Assembly: GCA_019828565.1 (NCBI GenBank)
Contig: JAHDYR010000003.1
Span: 248,001 to 312,000 of the forward strand
Origin: Carpediemonas membranifera BICM
Taxonomy: Eukaryota > Protista > Fornicata
DNA length: 64,000 nucleotides
Direction of reading: 5' to 3'
The notes below the pieces were generated by a model. The model was not told the origin of the DNA, did not search any database, and worked only from the letters and a program-made list of their open reading frames with translations. Numbering within the stretch: the stretch's first letter is position 1; each line of letters opens with the position of its first letter. This document shows, in pieces, positions 9,187 through 62,384 of this stretch. A program made the position numbers and the translations under genes.

Positions 9187-9237
9187 TTCAGTCGCCCCAG
9201 CGTCTGAAGGCGTTGACTATCGCTCAGATGCCAGACA
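9187..9237 (-). repeat. Conserved ~50-nt motif downstream of the RCC1-like unit (copy of 45953-46007)
   Basis: ttcagtcgccc..cagcgtctgaaggcg(t/c)tgactatcgctcagatgccagaca matches the reverse complement of 45953-46007. Confidence 0.85.
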
Positions 9238-9239
9238 CG

Positions 9240-15818: not shown

Positions 15819-16031
15819 TTGTGCTGCGCAGGATTAGAATTGTTGAGTCCAAAACACACAGTGATCCAAGCAGCATCAGGATCGCAGTGTGGTTCATCAT
15901 ACTCTATCAATCGTGCGCAGCATATCACGCGCGCTGCAGCGCGTGCTTGCTCAACTTAGCAAGTTAATGACAGCGAGGAAGAGCACCTCTCTGGGAGTCG
16001 TAGTGGAAAGGAGATTGCTCTATCTGATCTG
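15819..16031 (-). ncRNA. Stand-alone copy of the putative Fanzor omegaRNA/right end
   Basis: Reverse complement of 37216-37427 with 2 substitutions and 1 indel; flanks unrelated; no nuclease ORF attached. Confidence 0.8.
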
Positions 16032-16051
16032 CTTACCTTACCTTACCTTAC
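16032..16051. repeat. (CTTAC)x4 microsatellite at the 5' junction of the omegaRNA copy
   Basis: cttaccttaccttaccttac immediately adjacent to 16031. Confidence 0.9.
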
Positions 16052-16103
16052 AGTCTACACTGCCATCGTGACATAAACTGCACCATGAGGCGAGGACGAC
16101 CTG

Positions 16104-29434: not shown

Positions 29435-29600
29435 TATAGGACGATGTCTGGTGTCTCAACGCTCGTTGCTTTTTATGAAGCACTCAAAAACTGTGGGAGG
29501 GCCTCATAGGACCTGCCATACGCCCTAGAGCATGCCTTGTAGTCTCTTGAGGGCACCCACACTTTCTTGGAAATTGTGCAGGTCGGTATTGCACGAGCAG

Positions 29601-32600
29601 ATGAGGCCATTCTTGCTTCTCCTGCTCCTTGCCGCATGCTATTGCCTCTTTATAAGCGCCGAAACTACATACAAGAGCGATGACGAGCTGCAGCACTTCT
29701 ACGCGAACGAGGACGTCACTGTTACAATGGAGAACTACATCCTGGACGGAAACGCCGTCTATGTTGACTTCGGGGACGGTACTACAGTTGCGTGGTCCAG
29801 CACAGAAGAAGCCACACACGTTTATTCCGCTGCAGGCAACTATACGCTCACGATCTACTATTGCAGCGGCACGACAGGCACTACGCCCGTACCGACGTGT
29901 GATGATGTCTATTCACCCTTCACCCGTGCCCGGGTGGAGGTGCATGAGCGGGACCTGTGCTATCGCCTCCATGCCCGCGCCGTGGGCAACGAACAAGCCT
30001 CCTCTCTTGCCATTAACAACGGCGCGAGCATCGCTGTGTTCATTGAGGACCCTACCGGTGCCCTGGACTCTGCCACGCTGGCCAAGATGTACCAGAGCAT
30101 CGGCTTCGACCCCACCGTCGAGCCAACCAACAGTAGCGTCACCGTCACCGACGGTGCTTTCGATGAAGGCCACGGTTGCTGGAACTACACAGTCACGTCG
30201 AGCCAACAGGCCCCCGCGGTGCACGTGGAGCTCACACTGCGGGCCCCAGGGTACAACCACGGCAGCTGCCTGGTTGGATCGACCGTCATCCACCTCACGC
30301 TGATCAACGCACTCTCCTTCGACGACTTCGGCCATCTACCGGGCACTGCGACCAGCAGGATAGCCCAGGACATCGTCAGCAAGGGCTTCATCCCGACATC
30401 CCTCGGGGTCGCCACCCACCCCTGCACCCCTGCCGTCGGCATCGTCTGGATGACTGGAGGCCAGCCAGACTCAACCGACCCCGGCTATGACACCACCATC
30501 AGGGGCCTGGGCACATTGGTCTGGACTACCATGGATGGATTCGACACTGTGACACCGATTGACTTGGCAAGGGTTGATGAGCTCGATATCTTGACCGCAG
30601 ACGACCTTGATACGTCCATTGACAACTCCACATCGATCTGTGTGAGTAGTAGTATCAGATCTTGCCTTGGTATGGAGATTTATTCGATCTCGTTCGTCGG
30701 GGGTGACTATTCAATGATCGCGCTGACTTCCGAGGGCCCTGTGTTCATCCAGAGCCCCATAGCAGACGAGGCAGAAGCACTACACGCGACACTGACCGTC
30801 GCCAACTTTACCAGCATGAATTCTGACATCCTGACAACGCTTGACGGTCGAATGTCGACCGTACCTTACGAGTACGCCTCGCTGAGGGTCGCCCCGTACT
30901 GTCCTACTTACGGTGCCGACTCGACTTCCATGGTGACACTTGTGGTCGGCGGATCTGATGAATTTATGATGTACTCAGCCGTGGAGACTCGGTACTACGC
31001 TGTCCCAACGAGCGTGTCCTTTGCCGACCTCACTGACGATGAACGGGACGAGTATCAGGTGCACGCCCAGTCAGATATCGACCTTTCTATCGCCCACACC
31101 GTGGTCAGTGAGCCCAACTCCTGGACTGCGGTGGCCATTCCGAGCACACTAGCATTGGGTGAGCAGACTATCTTAGATGCTGTGTACAGCGTTGGCCAGC
31201 AGGCTTTCTTCTTCCTGACCAAGGACTCGAGCGATGAGCGTCGGGTTCTGCAGGCATACCAGGTGGAAGGCGAAGACGACACGACATCCGAGCAGGGCCA
31301 CTGGGTGGTCAGCGCGGGCTTTGGTGACCACACTGTGGTCGGAATTGAGCTCAGCGGGCCTAGTCTACTGGCCTACGGCGAACATGTCTGGGCGAGCTGG
31401 ATTGGAGACCTTGTGTTTCATGTACAGGTCAACTTCCCAGCGGGGGTGCTGGTTGAAACTCTCGTAACACAGCAGAACGAGCCGTATCTCGCCACTGCCA
31501 TCGACAGTGACGGCTTGCTCTACGTGCTAAGGCCGCCCATGCCTGGTGTCGGCGCCGTAGGACCCACTGCCGCTGGGATACTCTCATACCCACTGTGTAT
31601 GGTGGGGTTCGCCGCCGCCACGCTCACTGTGGAGATGCCCGCCGCGTACACCGGCGTCAGTGGCGATTATCCACTCGGGATCCTCTCTGACGTCGACTCC
31701 CTGGCCGTCAACCCGTTTAAGGTGGTGAGTATCCCATACGGCGCATTGCTGCTTGACATCACGCCCAGCAGCGCTACAAGGGGTATATCATGGGTGCCTG
31801 ATATTCTCCCAGCTTCATACCACGATGTGATGTGGACGCCGATGAATATCACCAGCGGCCTCCAGGCAGAGGTCGACCTCGATTTCACCATCGCATACAC
31901 CCTGACGGCTGGGGAATGGAGCAGTACGATCATCGGGGTTGACGGCAGGTTCGTCGAAACCAGCCACGACTTTGACGCACCGGTCGCTGCCACGACTCAC
32001 CCAGCCCTGCTCGCAGACCTCGCACCGACCTTCACATCAGCGACGGGAGACACATGGCCGGCCATGGGAGATGCAGCGGTGCTGACACTAGACATCAGCG
32101 CCCTTGCAGCCGCTGATCAGGTGGGATGGACGGGCAACTGCGTTGGGATGACCGTGCATTTTAAGACCGCTGGGGCCATCATCGTCACCGAAATAGTCTC
32201 GCAGACAGTTGCTAACGGCGTCATCGTGTTCCCCGGCCAACTCTCTCGTGTCCTCGGCACCACCGTCGAACCCGGCCGGTGGACGCTGTTCGCAGGCAAC
32301 GTACCATCCAACGTCGCAGCCCTCAGCCTTGGGCAGGCCCTCACGGTCTCAGCCCCGGCCGGGTCGCCCCCGGTGCAGACTCTGACACTTTCAGGAGACC
32401 CGCTCAGCACGTTCACGTGGGATGACGCGGATGTTGGGTATATCGTAGAAATCGACGGTGAGCGGGCAATCATCACCGCCATCGGCTCGTCAACTGTCGC
32501 CACAACCCTCCAGACGGGCGCCACTGCTCTCACAGCTGGCGCATACACCCTGACCGACTCGCTCACAGTCTCACCACCCGCTGATAGTGTCAGGCCGCAC

Positions 32601-33665
32601 ATTTCAACGGCTGACGCGGCCCTTGCCAGCGGTGAGGTGACTATCTTTACCGGAGTCGAGTCGAGTCAAGTTACTCTGACCCTGCCTGACACGCCGTTTA
32701 TTGACAAAGGAGCGTCTGTGGTCATCACATCCACTCTTCGCCCCGAGAACTCGATCATCGCGCTCAGTGACCCAAACAACTTCTCTGTAGCGGTCAAGGC
32801 GACGTCTACAGGCACTAACATCACACTTACCAACAACGGAGATGTCGCGAACACCCAGGTCGCCGTGTATCAGCTCGAGTCGTCACTCCACAGCACTGGA
32901 GGCCGCGCTACAGCCAGTTTCATCGCCGCATGCCCGCCCCAAGACGGCGTGGTGTTTGACACAGGCATGACTGACGCAGAGCTGCTCGATGTCGGGTCCA
33001 GCACGACCAACGTGGAGCTGCTGCCAACGAACTATCGCCCACCCAGCAAGTACGGTGTTGCTGTCCCAACTACAGACAACATTTATAACGGAGACCCAAG
33101 CACCGGGATGTATCTGACGACTGAGAGCCAGTCAACATCCACTGGTGAGTACAAGCAGTGTGCCGGTGCCTCGGACAGGGCGGGATGCGGATGCACCGAC
33201 GCCCAGACGATCAGCGACAACATCAACTACTCCGACTGCGTTGACCGGGCGTTCCGCTGGTATTACGGCGACCAATTCACACCGTCCTTCATCAGGTACA
33301 CCAACGGCGTGGGGTCGGCCATGACGAGCTCATATTTCCTGAAGGAGCTCAACGGCCGCATCGACTACTGCATTGACCCCGATGGCGATAATGTGTGCTC
33401 ATCCCAGTCCTCACAGGAAGCTTATTTGTTGGACTATGACACTGCCATCAAGTTTGCTGGCGAGGGGTTGTACCACTTTAAGATTTACATACAGGGCGAT
33501 ACATTCTGTAACATGACGTCGTTCATGAAGGTATGGATTTATGAGCCCCCAACCCGCGAGGTGATCAGGTACATGCAATACTCCATCACGGCGTTCATCA
33601 TGGCCACGCTGGTGTTCGGTTCGTATCTCATCAACCTCAAGGTCAACGGCCGCAGGTTCAAGTGA
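29601..33665 (+). CDS. CatSper auxiliary subunit beta-like type I membrane protein with N-terminal PKD domain
   Basis: Signal peptide; PKD motif VDFGDGT..THVY..AGNYT; C-terminal LPTNYRPPS.G.AVP.TDN.YN.DPS..TG.YKQCA....R..C.CT..SDC..LYHF....DTFCN + TM, matching my recollection of CATSPERB. Confidence 0.75.
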   Translation: MRPFLLLLLLAACYCLFISAETTYKSDDELQHFYANEDVTVTMENYILDGNAVYVDFGDGTTVAWSSTEEATHVYSAAGNYTLTIYYCSGTTGTTPVPTCDDVYSPFTRARVEVHERDLCYRLHARAVGNEQASSLAINNGASIAVFIEDPTGALDSATLAKMYQSIGFDPTVEPTNSSVTVTDGAFDEGHGCWNYTVTSSQQAPAVHVELTLRAPGYNHGSCLVGSTVIHLTLINALSFDDFGHLPGTATSRIAQDIVSKGFIPTSLGVATHPCTPAVGIVWMTGGQPDSTDPGYDTTIRGLGTLVWTTMDGFDTVTPIDLARVDELDILTADDLDTSIDNSTSICVSSSIRSCLGMEIYSISFVGGDYSMIALTSEGPVFIQSPIADEAEALHATLTVANFTSMNSDILTTLDGRMSTVPYEYASLRVAPYCPTYGADSTSMVTLVVGGSDEFMMYSAVETRYYAVPTSVSFADLTDDERDEYQVHAQSDIDLSIAHTVVSEPNSWTAVAIPSTLALGEQTILDAVYSVGQQAFFFLTKDSSDERRVLQAYQVEGEDDTTSEQGHWVVSAGFGDHTVVGIELSGPSLLAYGEHVWASWIGDLVFHVQVNFPAGVLVETLVTQQNEPYLATAIDSDGLLYVLRPPMPGVGAVGPTAAGILSYPLCMVGFAAATLTVEMPAAYTGVSGDYPLGILSDVDSLAVNPFKVVSIPYGALLLDITPSSATRGISWVPDILPASYHDVMWTPMNITSGLQAEVDLDFTIAYTLTAGEWSSTIIGVDGRFVETSHDFDAPVAATTHPALLADLAPTFTSATGDTWPAMGDAAVLTLDISALAAADQVGWTGNCVGMTVHFKTAGAIIVTEIVSQTVANGVIVFPGQLSRVLGTTVEPGRWTLFAGNVPSNVAALSLGQALTVSAPAGSPPVQTLTLSGDPLSTFTWDDADVGYIVEIDGERAIITAIGSSTVATTLQTGATALTAGAYTLTDSLTVSPPADSVRPHISTADAALASGEVTIFTGVESSQVTLTLPDTPFIDKGASVVITSTLRPENSIIALSDPNNFSVAVKATSTGTNITLTNNGDVANTQVAVYQLESSLHSTGGRATASFIAACPPQDGVVFDTGMTDAELLDVGSSTTNVELLPTNYRPPSKYGVAVPTTDNIYNGDPSTGMYLTTESQSTSTGEYKQCAGASDRAGCGCTDAQTISDNINYSDCVDRAFRWYYGDQFTPSFIRYTNGVGSAMTSSYFLKELNGRIDYCIDPDGDNVCSSQSSQEAYLLDYDTAIKFAGEGLYHFKIYIQGDTFCNMTSFMKVWIYEPPTREVIRYMQYSITAFIMATLVFGSYLINLKVNGRRFK

Positions 33666-34220: not shown

Positions 34221-35009
34221 AAGTTTGGTGGTGATGGCAAAACTGCGTTTTGTCCCGCCGATACGGCGGAAAAGGCTGGCAGCGCGAACAGCACTACCAT
34301 GGAGCCTGCATCTCTCGTGTCTGGCCCTTTTTCTCACTTGCCGCCATGTGCCAATGTGTGAAGAGGCCACTTGTCCCCACTCAAACTTACTGAGGCGCGC
34401 ATGGTAGGGCGTGAGGCGTGTTGAGGTCTTTGATGGTGATATGTGTGGCTATGTATCGATATAATTCTTGGACAGAGTACAACCATCCGTCTAATCGAAG
34501 AGAAATGGACCTCTTTAACACGCCAGACATCACCAACGATGATACGATCGATGTTTCCTGCTCTATGACCATCGATAGTTGTGGGGGCCGCAAGTGTGCC
34601 CGCGGTCTTGTTAAGCCACAGGCTGGCAAGATGTAGGGAGCTTTCTAATGGCGCCACAGCTGTTCTATCTGCTTTGGAGGAAACAGTGTAAACAATGGGA
34701 CGATTTGGACAGCCGTTGAGGCGTGCGCCGATTCATATATTCATGGATCTCTTGCATCCTGGATGTGAGAACCAAATATTCGCATGATGACGACGCGAGC
34801 ACATAGTATGGACCATAACAGTCGGCTTCTCCTTCACTTTCGCCGCCCCAGCCCCATTGATCCTCATCCCGCAGTTTAAGCCGCCACCGATGTGGTATTT
34901 AGAGGGTTTATGTGGAGGATTCATGTAAAGGTGACTTAGGCAGTCGACCCCCCTGGGATGAACTCCAGAGGACTGAACAGGTTCAGTCTGACGGCCCACC
35001 TGTCTTCTA

Positions 35010-35039
35010 GACTCAACAATTCTTATCATGCGCAGCACA
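35010..35039 (+). repeat. 30-nt direct repeat of the omegaRNA 3' terminus, upstream of the Fanzor ORF
   Basis: gactcaacaattcttatcatgcgcagcaca vs gactcaacaattctaatcctgcgcagcaca (15819 copy): 28/30 identical. Confidence 0.85.
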
Positions 35040-35361
35040 CTACCTCCACTCACCCACTTCAGCCCTCGTCTGTACAATCTGGCTTTCGTGCTTTCAGTCG
35101 TCGGTCTGCACGAAAAGATGCGTCGTCCATCGTCTGTGTCGAACGCTGCTGTCTTCTTTCGCGTCTGTGCTCGTCTGTTACGCGCTCATCTGTCGTCCAT
35201 TGCCGGCGTCTGAAGCTCATGACGTCGTCGTCGTCTGTTGTGAGAGACACTAGTGGTGGAAAGCGGTTGTAACTAGTAGTAAAGACGCTTTGTGTTGTAT
35301 GATGCTGGTTTCTTGTTTTGAGGGATGCTGCTAGCTGATGAACCCTGAAAAGAAATGATCG

Positions 35362-37283
35362 ATGCAGGCAGCTCAATATACTCCAATGCCTTCCAAGATA
35401 TACACGGTGAAGGCTTCCGTTAACAAGGCCATTGGCGAGATTAACGGTGGAGGCGATAACAACGCGCCGCGGCGAGGAAATCTTGAACCGGGCATGCGTT
35501 CTTTCACGCAGGCTAAGTACACATTCACTTGCCTGCTTGCGTGCGTCTCTGCATCTGCGCACGCGTTGACCCCACCGAGGACAGTCAACCTGTTCGACCA
35601 GGTCCTCGCGCAGATCGTCAGCATTGCTCAGCAAAAGGTGTCGAAGGCAAAGGCAGCGGATCGGTGCAGGTGGATTGGCGACCTGGCGATGTGGAGGGAC
35701 CCTGACATAACCCCACTCGTCCGGGACCTCGTCACGGCTTATAGCTACCTTGGCTTGTGCAAGCCATTTGACACCTGGTTGGGCGAGTACTCCACAGCAA
35801 CCCGGGTCTGGCTCTCGCGCGCGTCACCCGGGTACCTGACTCGTCTTCGTGCTGGATTAGAACGAGTGCGTCCGCTCCTCCATGATCAGCCGGGTGTTCG
35901 ACAGGATTTTCTCGACACCCTAGGCGAGCTCGACACTGAGGTTGCCGCAATATCCGCCGATCATGGCAGGTATCATCCTCAAATGCATCGCCCGAGGGGC
36001 AACGGGTGGGTCGCACTGGTACCGTGGCCGAGGCCCTTGTCGGCGTGCTGTCGTGCGTCACGCGCATGAGTGCTGCAGTGACCAAGCTGGTCACACTCAC
36101 TCGTGCCGTGAACCTCGAGCTCAGCCAGGCCCTGCCAGAGCCGAAGCTCATTCCGTTCGTGCCGATGGCGCCGGTCAGGCCTGGGTTCATGACCCTCGAG
36201 CGCGGAGTAACAGCGCTCACCCCCGCGATGAAGAGGCGCCTGCGTGTGCACGTGAATTGGTCAGCAACCAAGAATTTGACCGACGAGCAGGTTGATAGAT
36301 ACGAGCGTGATCACGGCGACATCACCAAGCTCCGCAGAGTGCTCTCTGTGAAGACAGACGGGGTCTCTGTTGCTGTGACGGTTTGGGTGGGTCGCGAGAA
36401 ATACCGTGGCGGACGGGTGGCTGACCGGCCCACGTACAAAAAGGGTAGCAGCAACAAGCGGGCTCGGCTCGGTCAGGATGACGCCGAGGCTACTCCTGCC
36501 CCGGACATTCAAGCTCTCATGGGCTTCGACCCTGGTGCTCGGTCGCTGGGCGGCTACACGATCCGCCGCCCAGACGGGCAGAGTGTATCTGGCGTACTCG
36601 CTAAGTGTGGCTACACTGTCACCCCCTCTTTCCGCGTGAATATGAGCGCAGCATCGTTCAAAACGACAAGTCTAGAGGCTCTCAAACAGTCGATTAGGTT
36701 TGTCCATGAGAACATCGTTCAGATCATCAACGAGGGGACGAGAAAGTGTTTCCGCCGGGCGACTTTTGCCAATCACTGTCTGCGCCTGAAGCACTTCGCC
36801 CGGGCTGGACGTCAACTCCTGGATGATCTCGGCGGGCGCCCCCAGGAGCCCATTCACCTCGAAGTCGCGTATGGGGCTGCACTGTTCGGTTCCGCCGGCA
36901 CTCCCTCCTGTGCTCCGTACCGCCACTTTGCTCGAGCTCTCCCTGGCATAATGCTCCGGCACAACGTCGTCGTGACTGTCACGATGGTCTCCGAATTCCG
37001 CACTTCCATCGTGTGCCCATACTGCAAAGCACACTTCAGACGTGTGGTGCACACACACCGCACCATGCTCTGCCAGAATCCCGCGTGCGAGGGAGCTCCA
37101 TGGCGCGTTGAACGGCTACGTCGGCATCCCGAGCAGAGAGACATACTTCTCAATCTCTCTCACCGAGATAAGAGCGCCAGCGAGAACATCCTTTGGTGCA
37201 CCTTCGATGCAACTTCAGATCAGATAGAGCAATCTCCTTTCCACTACGACTCCCAGAGAGGTGCTCTTCCTCACTATCATTAA
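35362..37283 (+). CDS. Fanzor1 (eukaryotic TnpB-family RNA-guided endonuclease), ~630-640 aa, with one frame break at ~35940-36069
   Basis: N-terminal YTVKASV; KTDGVSVAV; RuvC-I MGFDPG (D at 36528); SFKTTS; VAYGAALF; RuvC-II VSEFRTS (E at 36993); Zn finger CPYC..CQNPAC; RuvC-III HRDKSASENI (D at 37167). Confidence 0.85.
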
Positions 37284-37427
37284 CTTGCTAAGTTGAGCAA
37301 GCACGCGCTGCAGCGCGCGTGATATGCTGCGCACGATTGATAGAGTATGATGAACCACACTGCGATCCTGATGCTGCTTGGATCACTGTGTGTTTTGGAC
37401 TCAACATTCTAATCCTGCGCAGCACAA
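37216..37427 (+). ncRNA. Putative Fanzor omegaRNA scaffold overlapping the ORF 3' end; guide predicted from ~37428
   Basis: Conserved in a second copy; hairpins cttgct/agcaag (37284-37301), cacgcgc/gcgcgtg (37302-37321), and a long stem tgctgcgca(37325)/tgcgcagca(37416) enclosing gagt/actc, cacac/gtgtg, gatcc/ggatc. Confidence 0.75.
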
Positions 37428-37437
37428 CCGACAGGAA

Positions 37438-37851
37438 ATGGTGCTTCCTCGCAACTTCAGACTTCTTGAAGAGTTGGAAAGGTCTGAAAAGGGCATGATT
37501 GATGACTTGATTTCCTTTGGGCTCAATGAGGACGATCCCGAGGACAGAACACTTAGCCGATGGAATGCAACCATTATTGGAGCCGAAAGAACTCAATTCT
37601 TCAACAGAATTTACAACCTTTCGCTCTTCTGCGGTGCCAAGTATCCTTCCGAGCCCCCACAAGTCCGCTTCTTGTCCTGCATCAATGCATTCTTCGTCAA
37701 TGAGTCCGGCCTGGTACTCCCCGACGCTCTCCCGATCCTGAAGAACTGGAGGCCCGAGTCAACGATGGAGGACATACTGAAGGCTATTGCTGCGGCCATG
37801 GCGACTGCCCCGAGGAAGCCCCAGCCCGTCGAGGGAAGCTGCTACCAGTAG
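37438..37851 (+). CDS. MMS2: Ubiquitin-conjugating enzyme variant MMS2/UEV1
   Basis: MVLPRNFRLLEELE..EKG, W..TIIG, NRIYNL...CG..YP..PP.VRF. Confidence 0.9.
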   Translation: MVLPRNFRLLEELERSEKGMIDDLISFGLNEDDPEDRTLSRWNATIIGAERTQFFNRIYNLSLFCGAKYPSEPPQVRFLSCINAFFVNESGLVLPDALPILKNWRPESTMEDILKAIAAAMATAPRKPQPVEGSCYQ

Positions 37852-43128: not shown

Positions 43129-45182
43129 CCCGGCCTCTCTCGGAGCAGTTTACGGGCGCGGATCTTGACAGCGATGGCGAAAATGCACGTCTGATACACC
43201 AATTGTTCAGCGAGCATGCCACGGCCCCTTTCGCATGCGCATTCAGTGCATGTCGCGAGATTCGCTCTTCCAGATCCGGGGAGGATCAGCGGTCGCTGCG
43301 AGATGCCATTCTCGGATCGGAGATGCAACTTCGGGTTCCCCGAGGCCACTTTCCGTCCGAACACCAAATGTGCGGCATCTTCTCTTTCCTGAGCACCTCC
43401 CTGTCCCGCGATGACTACAAGGCCATCTACGACAACGCCTTCATGCTGGGCGCCGCGAGAGGCCCCGAGTACCATTCCCTGACGTACGAGGTCCCCGGCG
43501 CCCTCCTTGTTGGCTTCCACCGCCTCGCGATCAACGGCCTCGATGAGGGCTCGCACCAACCCCTCCGCACCGAGGGCCTCGGCCTGGTCTGCAACGGCGA
43601 AGTTTGTCCTCTCCAGCGCGCTCACATAGATCTACAACTACCGCCAGCTCCGCGAACAGTTCGACCTGCCCACGACGACGCACTCCGACTGCGAGGTCAT
43701 CCTCCACCTCTACGCCAAGCTCGGCTTCTCCAAGATGGTCTCCCTGCTCGACGGCGTCTTCGCCCTCAACATCTGGGACATGCGCGGCACTGAGCCCATC
43801 CTCTACGCGGCCCGCGACCCCTTCGGCGTCCGACCCATGTTCGAGTTCCGCACGCCCGACGGCGTCGGCTTCTCGTCGGAGCTCAAGATGGTCGCCGGTC
43901 TGGAGAAGGTCCTCGGCGTCACCGCCCACGCCGAGCAGTTCGCGCCCGGCACGTGGGCGAGCTTCCGCCTCTCGCAGGGCGGCTGGGAGGAGGTCAGCCG
44001 CGAGCGCTGGCACCGCCTGCCCGAGGCCGAGCAGATCCACTCCAGCGAGCAGGCCATGGATTCTGTACGCCGCACGCTCATCGCTGCCGTCCAGAAGCGC
44101 ATCGACACTTCTGATCGCCCAATCGCCTGCCTCCTCTCCGGCGGTCTTGACTCCAGCCTCATCACGGCGCTCGTGTGCCGGCTCTACTGCCCAGACGACC
44201 CCGGCCGCCTCGAGACCTACAGCATCGGGATGCCGGGCTCGGTTGACCTCAAGTACGCGCGCATGGTCGCCGACCACCTCGGGACGACGCACACCGAGGT
44301 GATTGTCTCCGAGGCTGACTTCCTGGCTGCCATCCCGGACGTTGCCGGGGCGATTGAGAGCTTCGACACGACGACCGTGCGCGCCAGCGTCGGCAACTAC
44401 CTCGTGTCGAAGTACATCAGCGAGCACAGCGAGGCGAAGGTCATCTTCAACGGCGACGGGTCCGACGAGGTCACGGGCGGCTACATGTACTTCCACTGCG
44501 CCCCGACGCCCGACGCCTTCGACGCGGAGTGCCGGCGCCTGCTGGGCGACATCCACTTCTTCGACGTCCTCCGTTCGGACAGGACCATCGCCTCCCAGGG
44601 GCTCGAGGCCCGCACGCCGTTCCTCGACAAGGAGTTCGTGCGCACGTACCTGACGATCGCCAGGACCGTCCGCTGTCACGCGATACACGGGCAGTGCGAG
44701 AAGTGGCTGCTCCGATCCGCCTTCGCCGACCTCGGCGTCCTGCCCAAGGCGGTGCTGTGGCGCACCAAGGAGGCATTCAGCGACGGCGTCAGCAGCACGA
44801 AGCGGGCCTGGTTCCAGGTCATCCAGGATACGGTCCAGGATTCTGAGATCGTCACCTCGCCCCACATGAGGCCCGCGACGGCCGAGCAGCGCCACTACCG
44901 GGCACTGTTCCAGCGGGTCTACGGCGAGCACCATGCGACAACGCTGCCGTACTTCTGGATGCCCAGGTTCGTCCAGGCGACGGACGCCAGCGCGCGGACA
45001 CTCGATGTATACAAGAGACGACAGCAGTAGTGTACATATGCGGATAAATGTGACATGTCATGACCCCAAGGTCGCCGAGCTCGAGGCCAGTCTGCCCGCC
45101 TGGAGAAGCACAGGATGGTGACTGATGTGTCGAGAAAGGGTAATCGGGCGTTCATACTCGCCCCAGTCGGCACTGTCATGGC
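43129..45182 (+). repeat. 2054-bp inverted duplication of 9983-12036
   Basis: Near-identical reverse complement. Confidence 0.95.
43368..45030 (+). CDS. ASNS: Asparagine synthetase, copy 2; intron 43602-43629
   Basis: Same motifs as copy 1; one visible K/E difference (cgcaaa vs cgcgaa). Confidence 0.95.
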
Positions 45183-45853
45183 TTGTCGGTGGCAAATTAT
45201 CTCATTTATATATCGGTCCAGGCAAGGAGGAGAACCGCTTCCACCCAGTCGCCGTGCCCGCTGGCTTTGTCCCAGATCACATCATGCATGTTAACTGGAC
45301 TGTCATCCTCTCCATGGGCGATCGGCAGATGATCAGCGGGTTCAACCATGATGGCCTGCTGGGGCTCGGGCACGATGATGAGCTGACTGGCTTCGAGGAG
45401 CTGCCCTTCAGGGTCGACCGGGTCGTGCCAGCAGATTCCTTCAACGTCTTCTTCAGCGGCCGCCAGCTGCTGTTCGCCGGCGAGGTTCCAAAGACGATTG
45501 CCCAGTCGGGCCTGCCGCCTGGATACGACGCTGACGAGGAGTGCGTCGCAGCCACCCCGCTCCGGTTCCCAGAGAGGGTCAAGGGGTTCTTTTGTGACGA
45601 TTATCTTCTCGTCTGGGTCACTGAAGGCCGCACTCATCTGCATGATGGAGATGCTCAGTACTCTGTGCTATTTGAGGCAAAAGCGTTGTCCAAAACAGCC
45701 GTCAGCTTATGTCGCAAGTCCACCGACATGTGGTTCAGGGTGACGGGCGTGTCAAGTGGGGTGGCGAAGCTGGTCGAGTGCGAGGCGCCCGATGATTGTG
45801 ACATCTTCGCCATCCTCTCAGTCGACTTAGACGCGTGGGAAGGCGGCGCCTAG
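45125..45853 (+). CDS. RCC1-like repeat family protein, probably 5'-truncated
   Basis: GFNHDGLLGLGH RCC1-like motif; paralog of 9240-10100. Confidence 0.55.
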   Translation: MCRERVIGRSYSPQSALSWLVGGKLSHLYIGPGKEENRFHPVAVPAGFVPDHIMHVNWTVILSMGDRQMISGFNHDGLLGLGHDDELTGFEELPFRVDRVVPADSFNVFFSGRQLLFAGEVPKTIAQSGLPPGYDADEECVAATPLRFPERVKGFFCDDYLLVWVTEGRTHLHDGDAQYSVLFEAKALSKTAVSLCRKSTDMWFRVTGVSSGVAKLVECEAPDDCDIFAILSVDLDAWEGGA

Positions 45854-45952
45854 CATGGCCATCGCCCAGGTCCCGTAAATTCGGATTCTCTGTTGGTTCA
45901 GCACTTGCCGGGAAGCTCTGACAGGACAGCCATGGGTAAATCTTTATATTAT

Positions 45953-46007
45953 TGTCTGGCATCTGAGCGATAGTCAGCGCCTTCAGACGCTGGCGAGGGC
46001 GACTGAA
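45953..46007 (+). repeat. Conserved hairpin-forming motif downstream of the RCC1-like gene
   Basis: Matches 9187-9237 inverted; cagcg/cgctg and cgccttc/gagggcg stems. Confidence 0.8.
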
Positions 46008-51930: not shown

Positions 51931-52229
51931 GATTTCACTGGCCAATGCACTGTCTGTCGATCAGACCCCAGCTCTGATTGGCCCAGCGAGATGGAAGCTC
52001 GCGTTGCTGTGTCAGAGGGGATGATCATAGCTGAGAATGCTTGGGTCCCAATGTTGGGGTCGATCTCAAAATGATTCACACAGCCAGGCTCCTGGCGAAA
52101 GACGAACCTGAGATTCAATTGAACCACTGTAGAGGCGACCTTGTCATCCAATAGGCAGTACAACAAGGGCGCAATCCTCAAGGTTCTCCATCGAGTCCTG
52201 GTGCAGTTTAAGGTTTGTCCGGAAGCGAG

Positions 52230-52748
52230 ATGAGCGCGATTGAGAGCCTTATACAGCAAATTAATGAATTGGAACGTGCAAACCGCGAGAATGAAAGCAA
52301 AATTCTCATGGAGCAACACAAAACTGCTGCAGCCAAGAAGGATCTCGAGGAGAGCAAGGAGAACGTCTCCAATCTCGAGAAACAGCTCTATTCCGTCAAT
52401 GAGAAGTGTCACACACTCGAGCAAAAGCTTTTGATGGCTGAACAATCCATCAAGCTGAAGGAAGAACAGATTGCCTCCCATGTCTATCAGCTTCAGAGCA
52501 TCCAGCGTGACATGAAGCACGAACAGGAGCAGTATCAGTCCCACAGGAGAGAGTTCAAGGAGCGGCTCGACGCTGTGAATGCCCAACTACTCCAGTACCT
52601 CACCGCTGGCGCTGCACCGACCGAGCTCCTCTCGCCAAGCGACGCTCCCGGCTCACAGGGCCCCGAGTCGCCCACGCAGTCGCAGGCGGTTGGAGAAAGC
52701 CAGGACGATGTGACTATGGAGACATGCACGACGGAGGAGTTCCCCTAA
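52230..52748 (+). CDS. Coiled-coil hypothetical protein
   Basis: E/Q/K heptads; the 3' end is re-duplicated in the tandem repeat. Confidence 0.6.
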   Translation: MSAIESLIQQINELERANRENESKILMEQHKTAAAKKDLEESKENVSNLEKQLYSVNEKCHTLEQKLLMAEQSIKLKEEQIASHVYQLQSIQRDMKHEQEQYQSHRREFKERLDAVNAQLLQYLTAGAAPTELLSPSDAPGSQGPESPTQSQAVGESQDDVTMETCTTEEFP

Positions 52749-53346
52749 ATTCACCCTAAATGATTCGAACTTCTTTTCTTTCATGCGGGTTTTGCCAGAG
52801 AGAATGGCTGAAGGTGACGCACACTGCTTCGTCATTCAAACTTCAGCGGTAGGAAGCCTTAACGATGTCCTCTATCTGCACCTTGCTGTGAGCTATGGTA
52901 CTTGTGTCGACTCGGGCGTAGTCGAGAATGGCCCGATGTGAGCAGGCGGCCTCAACTGCGCCTACCACATCCACCATCTAGACGCCGGCAAGGGTTTCCT
53001 CGCGGGCTTTGGAGAGACTCGCGTGGACGTCCCCCCGGTCCGGGCGTACACCCTGCCGGAACGATTCAAATCCTTGTTTCACGCATGGCAAGTCAACAGA
53101 AACGGCTACGTTGGCTGGGGTATGATTTGCAGGTGTGGGAGATGACAGCCCGACATCACCCCTTTGCACTGAAATCACTTCCAAGAAGTTATGTCTGGAA
53201 AACGCTTGTTTCGTCACATGGCCGAGAAAAGTCTTTCCCGAACTGATTCAGGACGTTTGCAGACTTATGCGGTCGAATCCGATGGCATGGGAGCAAGGAT
53301 CTCAGCGCACCAGAGGCTGGGTAAACTGCACTCGCGAAAAATCCGA

Positions 53347-54351
53347 ATGTCGGCTGATCAGCTAGGGGACGCATCAGAGCTTGTCCTCGACGACTTCGAG
53401 TACCTAAAAACGGTGGGGACAGGTACGTTCGGACGAGTTCGCCTTGTGAAACACAAGGTTACTGGACGCTTCTATGCGATGAAGATTCTAGACAAGAAAA
53501 GCGTCGTTCAGCACCGTCAAGTGCAGCATATCCTTAATGAGAAGTTCATTTTGTCCTCTATTCAACACCCATTCATTGTGAACCTTGCCGCCACCTTCCA
53601 GACGACGCGGAAACTTCTCATGGTTCTCGAGTACGTGCCTGGCGGTGAGTTGTTCAGCCATCTGAGGATGCGCGAGAAGTTTCCTCTGGACATCGTGCGG
53701 CGCTATGCTGCCGAGATCGTCCTCGCCTTCGAGTATCTGCACGCCCGCAACATTGTCTACCGCGACCTGAAGCCCGAGAACCTCCTGCTCGACGAGAAGG
53801 GTCACATCAAGATCACCGACTTCGGGTTCGGCAAGATCATCAACGAGCGCACCTTCACCATGTGTGGAACTCCTGAGTACCTCGCTCCCGAGATCATCCA
53901 GTCTAGAGGCCACGGCAAGGCCGTAGACTGGTGGGCCCTCGGCATCCTCATCTACGAGATGACGGCGGGCTATCCCCCATTCTACGACGCTGACGGGGAT
54001 CCCTATAAGACATATGAGCAGATCCTGTCTCAGCCAGTGCAGTTTACGTCTGACTTCGACTCCGACACCCGGTCCCTTGTCCGTCACCTGCTGCAGAAGA
54101 ACAAGAGCCAGCGCCTCGGTAACTTGCACGGTGGGGCCCAGGATGTGAAGCAGCACCGCTTCTTTGATGGAGTCAATTGGGATGCGATCTTCCAACGGCG
54201 GACTGACGGACCCATTATCCCCAAGGTCAAGGGTGCCGATGACACGAGTAACTTTGAGGATTATTCAGAAGACGACGACTTGCTGGACCCTGCAAAGCAG
54301 CGGCGCCCACTGAAGTTCAAGGGTGGTGTCGATCCGTTCGTCGGCTTCTAG
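53347..54351 (+). CDS. cAMP-dependent protein kinase catalytic subunit, copy 1
   Basis: [43 protein letters not shown]-terminal FVGF. Confidence 0.93.
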   Translation: MSADQLGDASELVLDDFEYLKTVGTGTFGRVRLVKHKVTGRFYAMKILDKKSVVQHRQVQHILNEKFILSSIQHPFIVNLAATFQTTRKLLMVLEYVPGGELFSHLRMREKFPLDIVRRYAAEIVLAFEYLHARNIVYRDLKPENLLLDEKGHIKITDFGFGKIINERTFTMCGTPEYLAPEIIQSRGHGKAVDWWALGILIYEMTAGYPPFYDADGDPYKTYEQILSQPVQFTSDFDSDTRSLVRHLLQKNKSQRLGNLHGGAQDVKQHRFFDGVNWDAIFQRRTDGPIIPKVKGADDTSNFEDYSEDDDLLDPAKQRRPLKFKGGVDPFVGF

Positions 54352-54585
54352 ATTGTTTACATAAAGCTCCATAAAGCTCCAACAGCATGTGGTGGTTTTT
54401 AGGCGTTCTGGTTTAGTCTATTGGTGCTAATCGGGTTGAGGAGAGAGTTTTGGTCGCCCTGGGGTAAACCAGGACAGAATAAGAAACACTCAGACTGCCC
54501 TAGACATGCGGGACTGGTTCATTAGGCTTTACATGCGTGTAAAGGGACTTATGTTAATGATCTGGCCACGTGAAGAGAGTGCGTG

Positions 54586-56455
54586 ATGCAGGCTATAGAC
54601 GTGCCTGCTACAGTCACGACGCGGTTGAAAGAGTTGCGGTACTGCCAGGATGATATTATGAAGCACAAGGGCACCAGCCGAATCTTCCAGCGGCTTCCTC
54701 GGCACCTTCGCCGCCGTGCGATGTCGTACGACGTCCACAGGTATCCCCGCAACGTGCGTCAGGCTGTTAAGCATGAAATGGACAAGACCAGTGTCGATCG
54801 CACGACAGGAGAGCCAATTGGCCCGAAGAAGCTTCGCAAGGCCATCAGGAAGCGCTCCAACCTTCTCACACGAACCTTCCGTCTATCGAGACCCAATGTA
54901 TGGCTCGAGACACATCTGTGGAACGTTAAGCGCTTCCATATGGCACCCCACTTCGGATACACCATCCCGACCTCCGCCACGATGAAGGGCATCCGCACGG
55001 TCTGGCGTATCGCCAACAGCGGCGCGGTAGTCCATGATATGTCATACTACACGCCTGTAGAGGTGCCAGACGTCGCAGCCCTCCCGACCCGCGGCACCCC
55101 GCTCCAGGTCGACGTCGGCGCCCTGCTGCCCGACATGGGGCTGCCCCTGACCCTCCCTATCGCCATAGCGGGCGACAGGGCGTTCATTGTAGTCCACAGT
55201 ACATTGGCAGACGCCTTGGTCGACGCCATACCCGGTGCCGTCTCCCGCCGGGATGCCCTGTGCGGCTACCGCCTGGTCGGGCCCGCTTCCCTCGACGTTG
55301 CCCGCACCGCCCTGGTCCCAGTGAACAACACCGCCCCCACCATGGCCCCCGGGTCCAGGCCCGACCCGACGAGGTCCTCATACGTCACGGTCGAGGACCC
55401 CCGCATCAAGGTAGTCCGCTCTTTCAACGGGGCCGACCCGTATGGCCTGCTGCCGATGAACAAGCGCCGTGACCCGCCGCACCCGCAGGAGACGGCGGTG
55501 GGGCCGGGCCAGGCCAAGGAGATGATCGCCCAGCTCAACCCCGCTGTCGGCGAGACACCCGCCCCAGCACCCCCAGCCTGGCCATGGCCCGCGGACGACG
55601 GGGACGTCACTGTCGACCGGGACGCCCTCGGGGACCTGGGTCGACCCGTACCGACGTGGCAGCTGAACGAGAGCCGGGCGGACCAGATCACGGGCCCGCC
55701 CGCCCCCGGCCCCCGCCCCACGGTGTGCATCACACCCCTGCCCCATGGGCGATCTCCCAGGCCTCCTGGTCCTGGCCCCCCGCGAACTGGGGCGGGTTTG
55801 TGTACAGAGGCCTGGTGCACGCCAGGGCCCACCCCCTGGGCCGCGAGGAGTGGCGGTACCTCGCCCATGAGACCGGCAGGGCACTGTACCCCTGAGGACT
55901 GTCCCTTGACAGCCCCCCGGGTACGGCTGCATGGTCGCCAGAGCCTGGGATGCCCTCGAGACATGGCGTCGCCGTCCCCCGGCCAAGCGGGCGCCCGTGG
56001 ATGCTGGGACACTCCCGGCACCGTTCATGCCGCCCATCTCTGCTGCTCTGGGTGATCAGTACGCCGAGTGCGAGCGGGCTCTCGTGGCCGCCGCTTCCTC
56101 TGTAGACGGCACTACGAGGGCCAAGGCTGGTGAGAAACGCCACGCGGCGAATATCCGCAAGACATGGCTGCTGACGAAGCGCCCGGACATGGCTGCCCCG
56201 CACACCGAGGGGCAGGGGGCCAGCACCAGTGTCCCCGTCGCCCCCATCCCCACTGACCCGCCCCGACTCAGCGGGCAGCGTGTCGTGCTGTTTGAGTGCG
56301 AGTCCGGTCGACCCCGGTCCTGTGGTAGGATCGGCGCGGGGTTCGTGTTGGAGAGTTGGTTCTCACTCCCGGCTGGACGTGTGAGGGGTCTCGCGGTGGA
56401 TGTTGGTCTCGGGGAGGATGCTGGGGTGACGTTTAGTGATGTTCCCTTCGTGTGA
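54586..56455 (+). CDS. POP1: RNase P/MRP subunit POP1, copy 1 (frameshifts in C/G runs)
   Basis: FQRLPRHLRRRAMSYD, WLETHLWNVKRFHM, HDMSYY; POPLD-like GREEWRYLAHETG..YPEDCP, W.RRPPAKR in shifted frames. Confidence 0.85.
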
Positions 56456-57222
56456 GTGAATATCGGGTTGACGGTACAGATTGCTCGGCGGGGCACCTCA
56501 CCGCTGGCGCTGCACCGACCGAGCTCCTCTCGCCAAGCGACGCTCCCGGCTCACAGGGCCCCGAGTCGCCCACGCAGTCGCAGGCGGTTGGAGAAAGCCA
56601 GGACGATGTGACTATGGAGACATGCACGACGGAGGAGTTCCCCTAAATTCACCCTAAATGATTCGAACTTCTTTTTCTTTCATGCGGGTTTTGCCAGAGA
56701 GAATGGCTGAAGGTGACGCACACTGCTTCGTCATTCAAACTTCAGCGGTAGGAAGCCTTAACGATGTCCTCTATCTGCACCTTGCTGTGAGCTATGGTAC
56801 TTGTGTCGACTCGGGCGTAGTCGAGAATGGCCCGATGTGAGCAGGCGGCCTCAACTGCGCCTACCACATCCACCATCTAGACGCCGGCAAGGGTTTCCTC
56901 GCGGGCTTTGGAGAGACTCGCGTGGACGTCCCCCGGTCCGGGCGTACACCCTGCCGGAACGATTCAAATCCTTGTTTCACGCATGGCAAGTCAACAGAAA
57001 CGGCTACGTTGGCTGGGGTATGATTTGCAGGTGTGGGAGATGACAGCCCGACATCACCCCTTTGCACTGAAATCACTTCCAAGAAGTTATGTCTGGAAAA
57101 CGCTTGTTTCGTCACATGGCCGAGAAAAGTCTTTCCCGAACTGATTCAGGACGTTTGCAGACTTATGCGGTCGAATCCGATGGCATGGGAGCAAGGATCT
57201 CAGCGCACCAGAGGCTGGGTAA

Positions 57223-58254
<1,032 letters not shown>

Positions 58255-58488
58255 ATTGTTTACATAAAGCTCCATAAAGCTCCAACAGCATGTGGTGGTT
58301 TTTAGGCGTTCTGGTTTAGTCTATTGGTGCTAATCGGGTTGAGGAGAGAGTTTTGGTCGCCCTGGGGTAAACCAGGACAGAATAAGAAACACTCAGACTG
58401 CCCTAGACATGCGGGACTGGTTCATTAGGCTTTACATGCGTGTAAAGGGACTTATGTTAATGATCTGGCCACGTGAAGAGAGTGCGTG

Positions 58489-60356
58489 ATGCAGGCTATA
58501 GACGTGCCTGCTACAGTCACGACGCGGTTGAAAGAGTTGCGGTACTGCCAGGATGATATTATGAAGCACAAGGGCACCAGCCGAATCTTCCAGCGGCTTC
58601 CTCGGCACCTTCGCCGCCGTGCGATGTCGTACGACGTCCACAGGTATCCCCGCAACGTGCGTCAGGCTGTTAAGCATGAAATGGACAAGACCAGTGTCGA
58701 TCGCACGACAGGAGAGCCAATTGGCCCGAAGAAGCTTCGCAAGGCCATCAGGAAGCGCTCCAACCTTCTCACACGAACCTTCCGTCTATCGAGACCCAAT
58801 GTATGGCTCGAGACACATCTGTGGAACGTTAAGCGCTTCCATATGGCACCCCACTTCGGATACACCATCCCGACCTCCGCCACGATGAAGGGCATCCGCA
58901 CGGTCTGGCGTATCGCCAACAGCGGCGCGGTAGTCCATGATATGTCATACTACACGCCTGTAGAGGTGCCAGACGTCGCAGCCCTCCCGACCCGCGGCAC
59001 CCCGCTCCAGGTCGACGTCGGCGCCCTGCTGCCCGACATGGGGCTGCCCCTGACCCTCCCTATCGCCATAGCGGGCGACAGGGCGTTCATTGTAGTCCAC
59101 AGTACATTGGCAGACGCCTTGGTCGACGCCATACCCGGTGCCGTCTCCCGCCGGGATGCCCTGTGCGGCTACCGCCTGGTCGGGCCCGCTTCCCTCGACG
59201 TTGCCCGCACCGCCCTGGTCCCAGTGAACAACACCGCCCCCACCATGGCCCCCGGGTCCAGGCCCGACCCGACGAGGTCCTCATACGTCACGGTCGAGGA
59301 CCCCCGCATCAAGGTAGTCCGCTCTTTCAACGGGGCCGACCCGTATGGCCTGCTGCCGATGAACAAGCGCCGTGACCCGCCGCACCCGCAGGAGACGGCG
59401 GTGGGGCCGGGCCAGGCCAAGGAGATGATCGCCCAGCTCAACCCCGCTGTCGGCGAGACACCCGCCCCAGCACCCCCAGCCTGGCCATGGCCCGCGGACG
59501 ACGGGGACGTCACTGTCGACCGGGACGCCCTCGGGGACCTGGGTCGACCCGTACCGACGTGGCAGCTGAACGAGAGCCGGGCGGACCAGATCACGGGCCC
59601 GCCCGCCCCCGGCCCCCGCCCCACGGTGTGCATCACACCCTGCCCCATGGGCGATCTCCCAGGCCTCCTGGTCCTGGCCCCCGCGAACTGGGGCGGGTTT
59701 GTGTACAGAGGCCTGGTGCACGCCAGGGCCCACCCCCTGGGCCGCGAGGGAGTGGCGGTACCTCGCCCATGAGACCGGCAGGGCACTGTACCCTGAGGAC
59801 TGTCCCTTGACAGCCCCCGGGTACGGCTGCATGGTCGCCAGAGCCTGGGATGCCCTCGAGACATGGCGTCGCCGTCCCCCGGCCAAGCGGGCGCCCGTGG
59901 ATGCTGGGACACTCCCGGCACCGTTCATGCCGCCCATCTCTGCTGCTCTGGGTGATCAGTACGCCGAGTGCGAGCGGGCTCTCGTGGCCGCCGCTTCCTC
60001 TGTAGACGGCACTACGAGGGCCAAGGCTGGTGAGAAACGCCACGCGGCGAATATCCGCAAGACATGGCTGCTGACGAAGCGCCCGGACATGGCTGCCCCG
60101 CACACCGAGGGGCAGGGGGCCAGCACCAGTGTCCCCGTCGCCCCCATCCCCACTGACCCGCCCCCGACTCAGCGGGCAGCGTGTCGTGCTGTTTGAGTGC
60201 GAGTCCGGTCGACCCCGGTCCTGTGGTAGGATCGGCGCGGGGTTCGTGTTGGAGAGTTGGTTCTCACTCCCGGCTGGACGTGTGAGGGGTCTCGCGGTGG
60301 ATGTTGGTCTCGGGGAGGATGCTGGGGTGACGTTTAGTGATGTTCCCTTCGTGTGA
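58489..60356 (+). CDS. POP1: POP1, copy 2 (frameshifted in homopolymers)
   Basis: Identical to copy 1 except for indels. Confidence 0.75.
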
Positions 60357-61145
60357 GTGAATATCGGGTTGACGGTACAGATTGCTCGGCGGGGCACCTC
60401 ACCGCTGGCGCTGCACCGACCGAGCTCCTCTCGCCAAGCGACGCTCCCGGCTCACAGGGCCCCGAGTCGCCCACGCAGTCGCAGGCGGTTGGAGAAAGCC
60501 AGGACGATGTGACTATGGAGACATGCACGACGGAGGAGTTCCCCTAAATTCACCCTAAATGATTCGAACTTCTTTTCTTTCATGCGGGTTTTGCCAGAGA
60601 GAATGGCTGAAGGTGACGCACACTGCTTCGTCATTCAAACTTCAGCGGTAGGAAGCCTTAACGATGTCCTCTATCTGCACCTTGCTGTGAGCTATGGTAC
60701 TTGTGTCGACTCGGGCGTAGTCGAGAATGGCCCGATGTGAGCAGGCGGCCTCAACTGCGCCTACCACATCCACCATCTAGACGCCGGCAAGGGTTTCCTC
60801 GCGGGCTTTGGAGAGACTCGCGTGGACGTCCCCCCGGTCCGGGCGTACACCCTGCCGGAACGATTCAAATCCTTGTTTCACGCATGGCAAGTCAACAGAA
60901 ACGGCTACGTTGGCTGGGGTATGATTTGCAGGTGTGGGAGATGACAGCCCGACATCACCCCTTTGCACTGAAATCACTTCCAAGAAGTTATGTCTGGAAA
61001 ACGCTTGTTTCGTCACATGGCCGAGAAAAGTCTTTCCCGAACTGATTCAGGACGTTTGCAGACTTATGCGGTCGAATCCGATGGCATGGGAGCAAGGATC
61101 TCAGCGCACCAGAGGCTGGGTAAACTGCACTCGCGAAAAATCCGA

Positions 61146-62150: not shown

Positions 62151-62384
62151 ATTGTTTACATAAAGCTCCATAAAGCTCCAACAGCATGTGGTGGTTTTTA
62201 GGCGTTCTGGTTTAGTCTATTGGTGCTAATCGGGTTGAGGAGAGAGTTTTGGTCGCCCTGGGGTAAACCAGGACAGAATAAGAAACACTCAGACTGCCCT
62301 AGACATGCGGGACTGGTTCATTAGGCTTTACATGCGTGTAAAGGGACTTATGTTAATGATCTGGCCACGTGAAGAGAGTGCGTG

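What the first reader, a model, noticed from the sequence alone, without database searches (positions are those of the whole stretch)
35362..37450. Fanzor1-type RNA-guided nuclease with a cognate structured omegaRNA in a metamonad-like protist
Seen: two overlapping ORFs (35362-36069, 36006-37283) together encode ~640 aa with TDGVSV, GFDPG, YGAALF, SEFRTS-CPYC, CQNPAC and HRDKSASENI. All three RuvC acidic residues and the zinc finger are intact. A 212-nt multi-hairpin block overlaps the last ~22 codons and runs to 37427. Established: this motif order and size are those of Fanzor1/TnpB (OMEGA) nucleases, whose guide RNA comes from the element's right end, with flanking host DNA as the spacer. 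Inference: this is a complete eukaryotic OMEGA system in a lineage where I am not aware of a characterised Fanzor.
Basis: partly seen in the sequence, partly recalled or inferred. Interest (0 to 1): 0.95.

Follow-up and report, generated by a model that had tools for sequence, protein, structure and literature searches.

The report
Fanzor nuclease in LTR-like mobile element
This is a frameshifted copy of an abundant mobile element of the free-living protist Carpediemonas membranifera; it carries a gene for a very divergent, probably RNA-guided DNA-cutting protein (Fanzor) between ends shaped like tiny retrotransposon LTRs and lands next to host promoters, a carrier the literature says has not been seen for these enzymes.

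Summary
The motifs and the structured right end are real. The protein is a divergent Fanzor1-type nuclease of Carpediemonas membranifera: about 120 records in three subfamilies, nearest to giant-virus TnpB/Fanzor-like clusters (TM 0.59-0.64). This copy is not complete: a private 4-nt deletion near 35982 splits the ORF, while an intact 642-aa paralog exists elsewhere. The gene sits in a 2,536-bp element (34891-37426) with TG...CA ends, a 5-bp duplication and no transposase. Read backwards, the element has about 41-bp LTR-like repeats, a purine tract and solo repeats. Insertions fall 11-13 nt from a host promoter-like motif (GCAGTTTA), always on the left-end side; here the element landed 11 nt before the UEV1/MMS2 start codon. 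A solo scaffold copy with another guide lies at 15820-16031. Best reading: a non-autonomous Fanzor element on an LTR-derived chassis, inserted by a Ty3/Gypsy-type integrase. The two repeats keep fixed differences, so canonical LTR copying does not fit. No adjacent TAM, guide-RNA expression or cleavage is shown. I found no paper on this family; the scan already noted it on other DNA of this genome.

The parts
34871..34878 (+). Host promoter-like target motif GCAGTTTA, 12 nt before the element
34886..34890 (+). Left 5-bp target-site duplication ACCGA
34891..35039 (-). Left end; on the minus strand an LTR-like TGT...ACA repeat, 41 bp in its short form and 149 bp here because of an insert
34903..35005 (-). 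Insert in the left repeat between two TTTAG-like words; a longer form in L008 reads as an endonuclease-like C-terminus (non-LTR origin inferred from motif memory; no Pfam hit)
35011..35039 (+). 29-bp direct repeat of the element's right end
35040..35057 (-). Purine tract abutting the left repeat (PPT-like; pyrimidine tract on the gene strand)
35362..35985 (+). Fanzor gene, N-terminal part, up to the 4-nt deletion near 35982
35986..37283 (+). Fanzor gene, C-terminal part: RuvC-I D 36528, RuvC-II E 36993, C4 zinc finger 37014-37088, RuvC-III D 37167
37284..37426 (+). Predicted omegaRNA scaffold: two short hairpins and a long terminal stem; one more hairpin at about 37226-37269 overlaps the ORF end
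37387..37426 (-). Right-end LTR-like repeat (40 bp here), also the 3' arm of the terminal RNA stem
37427..37431 (+). Right 5-bp target-site duplication ACCGA
37432..37451 (+). Predicted guide (flanking host DNA), spanning the UEV1/MMS2 start codon
   Evidence: inference from PMC13565253
37438..37851 (+). Host UEV1/MMS2-like ubiquitin-conjugating gene, start codon 11 nt after the element
15820..16061 (-). Solo right-end copy (scaffold 16031-15820, 98.6% identical) with another flank; gene and left end replaced by a TAAGG run; same motif 12 nt upstream (16074-16081), duplication 4/5

Best explanation
A non-autonomous mobile element whose only gene is a divergent Fanzor1-type nuclease, with its guide-RNA scaffold at the right end (anatomy shown). 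The ends derive from a very short LTR retroelement lying antisense to the Fanzor gene, and a Ty3/Gypsy-type integrase acting in trans inserts it, giving TG...CA ends and 5-bp duplications (inferred). A host factor bound to the promoter-like motif probably tethers the integrase, as Sap1 does for Tf1 and TFIIIB for Ty3 (inferred). Intact copies would make Fanzor, load right-end RNAs (also in trans from broken and solo copies), cut element-free sister chromatids or alleles, and let homologous recombination copy the element in (inferred from the OMEGA homing model; this host lacks NHEJ, PMC8516963). This copy most likely makes no full protein but may still supply a guide RNA. Whether the mobile form is RNA or DNA is open; ordinary two-jump LTR copying does not fit.
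For: Atlas features 0.97-0.98 and TM 0.59-0.64 over 473-511 residues to ~600-800 aa TnpB-domain/DUF8286 clusters of giant viruses (one source). DPG, shifted E and C4 spacing met; weak but in-register match to GtFz1 (E 1.5). Perfect 5-bp duplication in 11 of 18 two-ended copies. TG...CA repeats and a purine tract in all three subfamilies, whose proteins are only 40-44% identical. Solo repeats exist. A resident Ty3/Gypsy has a 54-bp TGT...ACA LTR holding the same motif. Motif with at most 2 mismatches at 10/10 A/C sites and, reversed, at 6/6 B sites, versus 0.9% and 0.3% background; 0/16 on the mirror side. 14/17 insertions lie within 75 nt upstream of a host ATG versus 29% expected, p 6e-6. Motif near 32/122 host starts versus 6.2 in shuffles.
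Against: The two repeats of an element differ in fixed ways in every family, and the insert stays in one repeat only across independent insertions; canonical reverse transcription would erase this. No tRNA primer site was seen. The only Gypsy I could read has a different LTR and a 4-bp duplication, so the helper is not identified here. No conserved base lies next to the duplication, so a normal TAM is missing. No compensatory changes among the near-identical A scaffolds. My AlphaFold models failed (pLDDT 35 and 32). The motif consensus was drawn from the same sites it scores.
Confidence: 0.6

Rival explanations
1. A cut-and-paste DNA transposon moved by an unidentified DDE transposase of the integrase type (Ginger/IS481/IS3-like). 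Fanzor does ordinary restorative homing at excision sites; the internal repeat and pyrimidine tract are the Fanzor promoter, not an LTR and PPT.
For: Each end is inherited intact, as in DNA transposition. Fanzor-only elements with an unknown helper and variable 5-nt duplications are known (10.1101/2023.08.09.552727). Homing pays best for elements that excise (PMC13565253). The repeat contains a promoter-like motif.
Against: Only 3-6 bp of inverted repeat; three unrelated end sequences all show direct repeat plus purine tract plus solo copies; no empty-site joint among the contigs laid (weak evidence); no such transposase in 12 loci.
Confidence: 0.22
2. One reading: this locus is a working, complete OMEGA system (break is an assembly error or is bypassed), possibly kept to act on the UEV1/MMS2 start region.
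For: Catalytic residues intact; only one frame break; nanopore-based assembly of a repeat family (PMC8516963); guide spans the start codon.
Against: The deletion removes one unit of a 4-nt tandem and is private; six of the seven other copies are also broken, each differently; substitutions spread almost evenly over codon positions. The guide is simply the insertion flank, and most copies sit near a start codon. One RNA-guess run has no contig depth over 35512-36195.
Confidence: 0.1
3. Fanzor itself reads the motif as a distant TAM and positions integration 12-13 nt away, like Cas12k in CAST elements.
For: Motif orientation is subfamily-specific (A and C forward, B reverse) and strictly tied to the left end; no other protein is encoded.
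Against: The motif is a common host upstream element and also lies in Gypsy LTRs; solo repeats without Fanzor obey the same rule; known Fanzor1 TAMs abut the target (PMC13565253); RuvC residues are kept.
Confidence: 0.08

Closest known systems
Fanzor1 elements SPu-1 (SpuFz1), SfAV Fanzor1, GtFz1 (PMC3627910; 10.1101/2023.08.09.552727; PDB 9cer)
   Same: 600-650 aa, DPG, E shifted to 7 residues before the C4 finger, RD; Fanzor is the only gene; right-end RNA with a terminal stem next to a variable flank
   Different: No real terminal inverted repeats; random 5-bp duplication; no motif next to the target; direct terminal repeats; no significant sequence match outside Carpediemonas
Non-autonomous LTR elements (TRIM/LARD-type; from my own knowledge)
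   Same: Short TG...CA direct repeats, purine tract, 5-bp duplication, solo repeats, antisense cargo, no mobility gene
   Different: The two repeats are alike only over the first ~30 nt and keep fixed differences; no tRNA primer site; cargo is a nuclease whose RNA uses one repeat
Tf1 (S. pombe) and Ty3 (S. cerevisiae) targeted integration (PMC7175516)
   Same: Insertion at promoters at a set place relative to a bound factor; Sap1 binds both LTRs and targets, as the motif here lies in both
   Different: Strict one-sided orientation, subfamily-specific; tethering factor unknown
IS200/IS605 and IS607 TnpB elements
   Same: Right end makes the guide RNA; left and right ends share sequence in direct orientation
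   Different: These make no target duplication and have an adjacent TAM and a Y1 or serine recombinase; none seen here

Membership tests
Fanzor1 | DPG motif in RuvC-I | tested here: met
   FDPG invariant in subfamilies A, B, C
Fanzor1 | Catalytic E just upstream of the zinc finger | tested here: met
   E330, first Cys 337; aligns with the GtFz1 E
Fanzor1 | D-X(125,275)-[TS][TS]-xx-C4-X(5,50)-RD (PMC3627910) | tested here: met
   spacings 157 and 25
Fanzor1 | Full-length TnpB/Fanzor fold, ~600-700 aa | tested here: met
   Atlas model of paralog P0047, TM 0.59-0.64 to 601-818 aa clusters; own AF2 models uninformative
Fanzor1 | Branches with Fanzor1 rather than Fanzor2 in a tree | not tested
   no alignable outside homologs; assignment rests on size and Atlas neighbours
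Fanzor1 | Intact reading frame in this copy | tested here: not met
   4-nt deletion at codon ~209; intact in L003/P0047
Fanzor1 | omegaRNA from the right end running into the flank | tested here: inconclusive
   sharp conservation boundary and stable fold; no covariation, no Rfam hit, no small-RNA data
Fanzor1 | TAM directly 5' of the target, including the 5' duplication | tested here: not met
   no conserved base within 12 nt of the left end; motif lies further out
Fanzor1 | RNA-guided DNA cleavage | not testable with these tools
   needs biochemistry
Non-autonomous LTR retroelement | TG...CA terminal direct repeats | tested here: met
   A ~41 bp, B 48 and ~63 bp, C 40 and 43 bp
Non-autonomous LTR retroelement | 4-6 bp target duplication | tested here: met
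   5 bp, 11 of 18 perfect
Non-autonomous LTR retroelement | Purine tract before the 3' repeat | tested here: met
   15, 18 and 17 purines of 20; 16 or more in 0.9% of background
Non-autonomous LTR retroelement | Identical repeat pair in young copies | tested here: not met
   fixed differences in all three subfamilies
Non-autonomous LTR retroelement | Primer-binding site after the 5' repeat | tested here: inconclusive
   no TGG-type tRNA site; 8-nt palindrome in two B copies only
Non-autonomous LTR retroelement | Autonomous partner with matching ends | tested here: inconclusive
TIR DNA transposon (DDE) | Terminal inverted repeats of 10 bp or more | tested here: not met
   3-6 bp only
IS200/IS605/IS607 | No target duplication | tested here: not met
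   5-bp duplications

The most novel reading that the evidence does not exclude
These are Fanzor homing nucleases that spread through an RNA intermediate on LTR-retrotransposon machinery by a non-standard copying route, never excise, and drive themselves into empty sister chromatids or alleles, using the host promoter motif 12-13 nt away in place of an adjacent TAM. That would contradict the stated view that retrotransposons carry no Fanzor (PMC13565253) and give a nuclease with a new recognition geometry.
Probability: 0.3. Interest if true: 0.85.

Novelty: new variant of a known kind. Interest (0 to 1): 0.67.

Why it matters
[quoted passage not shown] Three subfamilies with LTR-like ends in one genome challenge that and make it testable. 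The lack of an adjacent TAM, with a fixed motif 12-13 nt away, points to an unknown way of telling empty from filled sites. The host lacks NHEJ and ORC and is proposed to depend on recombination (PMC8516963), so an abundant guided nuclease could be a notable source of breaks there (speculation). The intact 642-aa paralog and three protein/RNA pairs are ready candidates for biochemistry. This particular copy matters less: it is broken in the assembly.

Tried and rejected
Intron: the NCBI model (J8273_1077) skips the break with a predicted intron, but the paralog codes straight through there, so I rejected it. The 35001-35039 match as a second, upstream omegaRNA: rejected, it does not fold (z +1.0) and is part of the left end. 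Pfam, NCBIfam and PDB sequence searches gave only weak zinc-finger hits. Two AlphaFold runs were too poor to use and Foldseek gave nothing. No relatives in metagenome or viral contigs; 75 hits to a 17-nt end word were chance (two contigs labelled human-gut metagenome were left out of the comparison). No Rfam match. No second target for any guide in the DNA held, apart from one 14/15 self-element match. A test of whether the end repeats recombine more than the body failed because all copies are mosaics throughout, which may partly be a polishing artefact. Read depths were not used as copy numbers.

Full report
Observation. The ORFs 35362-36069 and 36006-37283 and the listed motifs are present. 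In ORF2, D175, E330 and D388 sit at 36528, 36993 and 37167; E lies 7 residues before the first Cys; the spacings D-to-TS (157) and C4-to-RD (25) meet the Fanzor motif of PMC3627910. The right end folds well: z -3.07 for 37216-37445 and -4.4 for the last 145 nt, as two short hairpins and a long terminal stem.

Host and family. All 40 hits of ORF2 are Carpediemonas membranifera proteins, about 120 records in all. The window is contig JAHDYR010000003.1, gene model J8273_1077. HMMER over 1.84 billion representatives and a profile search found nothing else. There are three subfamilies, A (this one), B and C, 40-44% identical. The ESM Atlas puts the intact paralog P0047 at 0.98 by features and TM 0.59-0.64 over 473-511 residues next to TnpB-domain/DUF8286 clusters, mostly of giant viruses; the window's ORF2 scores 0.97; these count as one source. 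The C-terminal profile hits Cas12f (E 0.0014) and, weakly but with the E in register, GtFz1 (E 1.5). My own AlphaFold models failed. Fanzor-type is well supported; Fanzor1 rests on size and neighbours, without a tree.

This copy is broken. Against L003 (P0047, 642 aa, one ORF) it lacks 4 nt at codon ~209 and 3 nt at codon 80; none of 7 other copies shares the 4-nt loss, and only L003 of the 8 is intact. Substitutions fall almost evenly on the three codon positions, as in neutral decay. All contigs that bridge 35982 carry the 4 letters but differ at 6-8 other places, so they are other copies and cannot settle this allele.

The element. From 12 loci of the same assembly it runs from 34891 (TGTG) to 37426 (CACA), 2,536 bp, between two ACCGA. 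Eleven of 18 two-ended copies have a perfect 5-bp duplication. It encodes nothing but Fanzor. The last 29 bp recur in direct orientation at 35011-35039. On the minus strand the plan is: 41-bp TGT...ACA repeat, antisense scaffold and gene, purine tract, second repeat. The second repeat is split by an insert of varying length (103 nt here); its longest form reads like an endonuclease C-terminus, which I take for a non-LTR remnant by motif memory only. B and C have the same plan with unrelated repeats, and purine tracts of 18 and 17 in 20. Solo repeats of 43-65 bp occur. A resident Ty3/Gypsy in L003 (RT, RNase H, integrase) has a 54-bp TGT...ACA LTR, with solo copies at window 9414-9467 and in L002, but a 4-bp duplication: the same style, not the proven helper. 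I saw the repeats and duplication first; the LTR reading came from earlier scan notes and I then tested it.

What does not fit LTR copying. Standard reverse transcription makes both LTRs identical each round (established knowledge). Here the distal parts of the two repeats differ in a fixed way in all three subfamilies, the insert stays in one repeat over independent insertions, and even the shared 29 nt differ within four A copies. No tRNA primer site is seen. So either the mobile form is DNA with both ends kept, or copying is non-standard. Copies are extreme mosaics (minimum 28 crossovers in 2.4 kb among 8 copies) and inter-subfamily chimeras exist (P0005; L012), as template switching or ectopic recombination would give; polishing artefacts cannot be excluded.

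Target choice. All 8 scored A sites and both C sites have GCAGTTTA (0-2 mismatches) ending 11-13 nt before the left end; all 6 B sites have the reverse motif at exactly 12 nt. Backgrounds are 0.9% and 0.3%, and the mirror side never has it. The consensus came from these sites, but it stands independently: 16 exact copies in the window versus 0.78 expected, and within 80 nt of 32 of 122 host start codons versus 6.2 in shuffles, in both orientations. Fourteen of 17 insertions lie within 75 nt upstream of a host ATG versus 29% for random intergenic points (p 6e-6). Here the element split the motif from the UEV1/MMS2 start, 18 nt apart in the empty site. That explains why the guide covers a start codon, with no need for a regulatory role. 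A run guessed to be RNA has UEV1 contigs with a poly(A) end and no depth over much of the Fanzor ORF; contigs cannot show starts or levels. Tf1/Sap1 and Ty3/TFIIIB are the precedents for tethered promoter integration (PMC7175516).

The RNA. Conservation among 10 A copies stops exactly at CACA and the flanks differ, as for TnpB/Fanzor right-end RNAs. B and C also end in a long terminal stem. There is no compensatory change among the near-identical A copies and no expression data, so the RNA is inferred. The solo copy at 15820-16031 keeps the scaffold, the motif at 12 nt and a 4/5 duplication; its gene is replaced by a TAAGG run, a filler also seen at another deletion joint. In known Fanzor1 the 5' duplication is part of the TAM and the 3' one part of the scaffold (PMC13565253). 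Here the duplication and the 7 nt before it are random, so how the nuclease would spare the filled site is unexplained; the distant motif is the only candidate.

Mechanism. Shown: anatomy, target rule, decay of this copy, one intact paralog. Inferred: insertion by a Ty3/Gypsy-type integrase in trans; tethering by a promoter-binding host factor; guide RNA from the right end; cutting of empty sisters or alleles and copying-in by recombination in a host without NHEJ (PMC8516963).

Novelty. No paper in the library holds Fanzor with Carpediemonas or metamonad; supplementary tables of the Fanzor surveys were not checked and subscription papers are missing. The 2026 review finds no retrotransposon with a Fanzor. 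It works like a Fanzor1 element and meets the protein signature; it fails the adjacent-TAM test and, as an LTR element, the identical-repeat test, so I file it as a new variant. The scan has reported the same family on other DNA of this genome; those notes are leads, not support.

Noticed in passing
window 9414-9467: 54-bp solo Ty3/Gypsy LTR holding GCAGTTTA 8 nt from its end; same LTR heads a gag-pol in L003 and is solo in L002 with a 4-bp duplication
   Followed up: partly
window 9187-12036 and 43129-46007: Inverted duplication, 2,054 bp identical, containing an asparagine synthetase gene, with flanks similar to an RCC1-like repeat in L005
   Followed up: no
window 52200-64000: Three near-identical 3.9-kb tandem units with a protein kinase A-like gene and a POP1-like gene, with frameshifts between units; recent amplification or assembly artefact
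   Followed up: no
window 16032-16050: TAAGG run, the probable telomere repeat, fills the deletion joint of the solo copy; a head-to-head TAAGG/CCTTA filler seals another deletion derivative (35361 to 35622)
   Followed up: partly
window 35181-36937: A 1,755-nt internal deletion derivative appears as a joint in all four runs laid
   Followed up: no
L005 18648-21899: Non-LTR retrotransposon ending about 190 nt before a tRNA-His gene
   Followed up: no
L003 230-5845: Ty3/Gypsy with its integrase 3' part inverted and a 1,546-bp duplication; hairpins in place of a tRNA primer site
   Followed up: partly
L010 9232-9235 and L012 11239-11246: Elements nested at each other's ends: an A copy lies 12 nt after the motif-like word inside a B right end
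   Followed up: partly
L012 556-2413 and protein P0005: Chimeric elements joining subfamilies B/C and B/A inside the Fanzor gene
   Followed up: no
window 29532-33665: 1,377-aa membrane protein with a CATSPERB C-terminal Pfam hit in a flagellate
   Followed up: no
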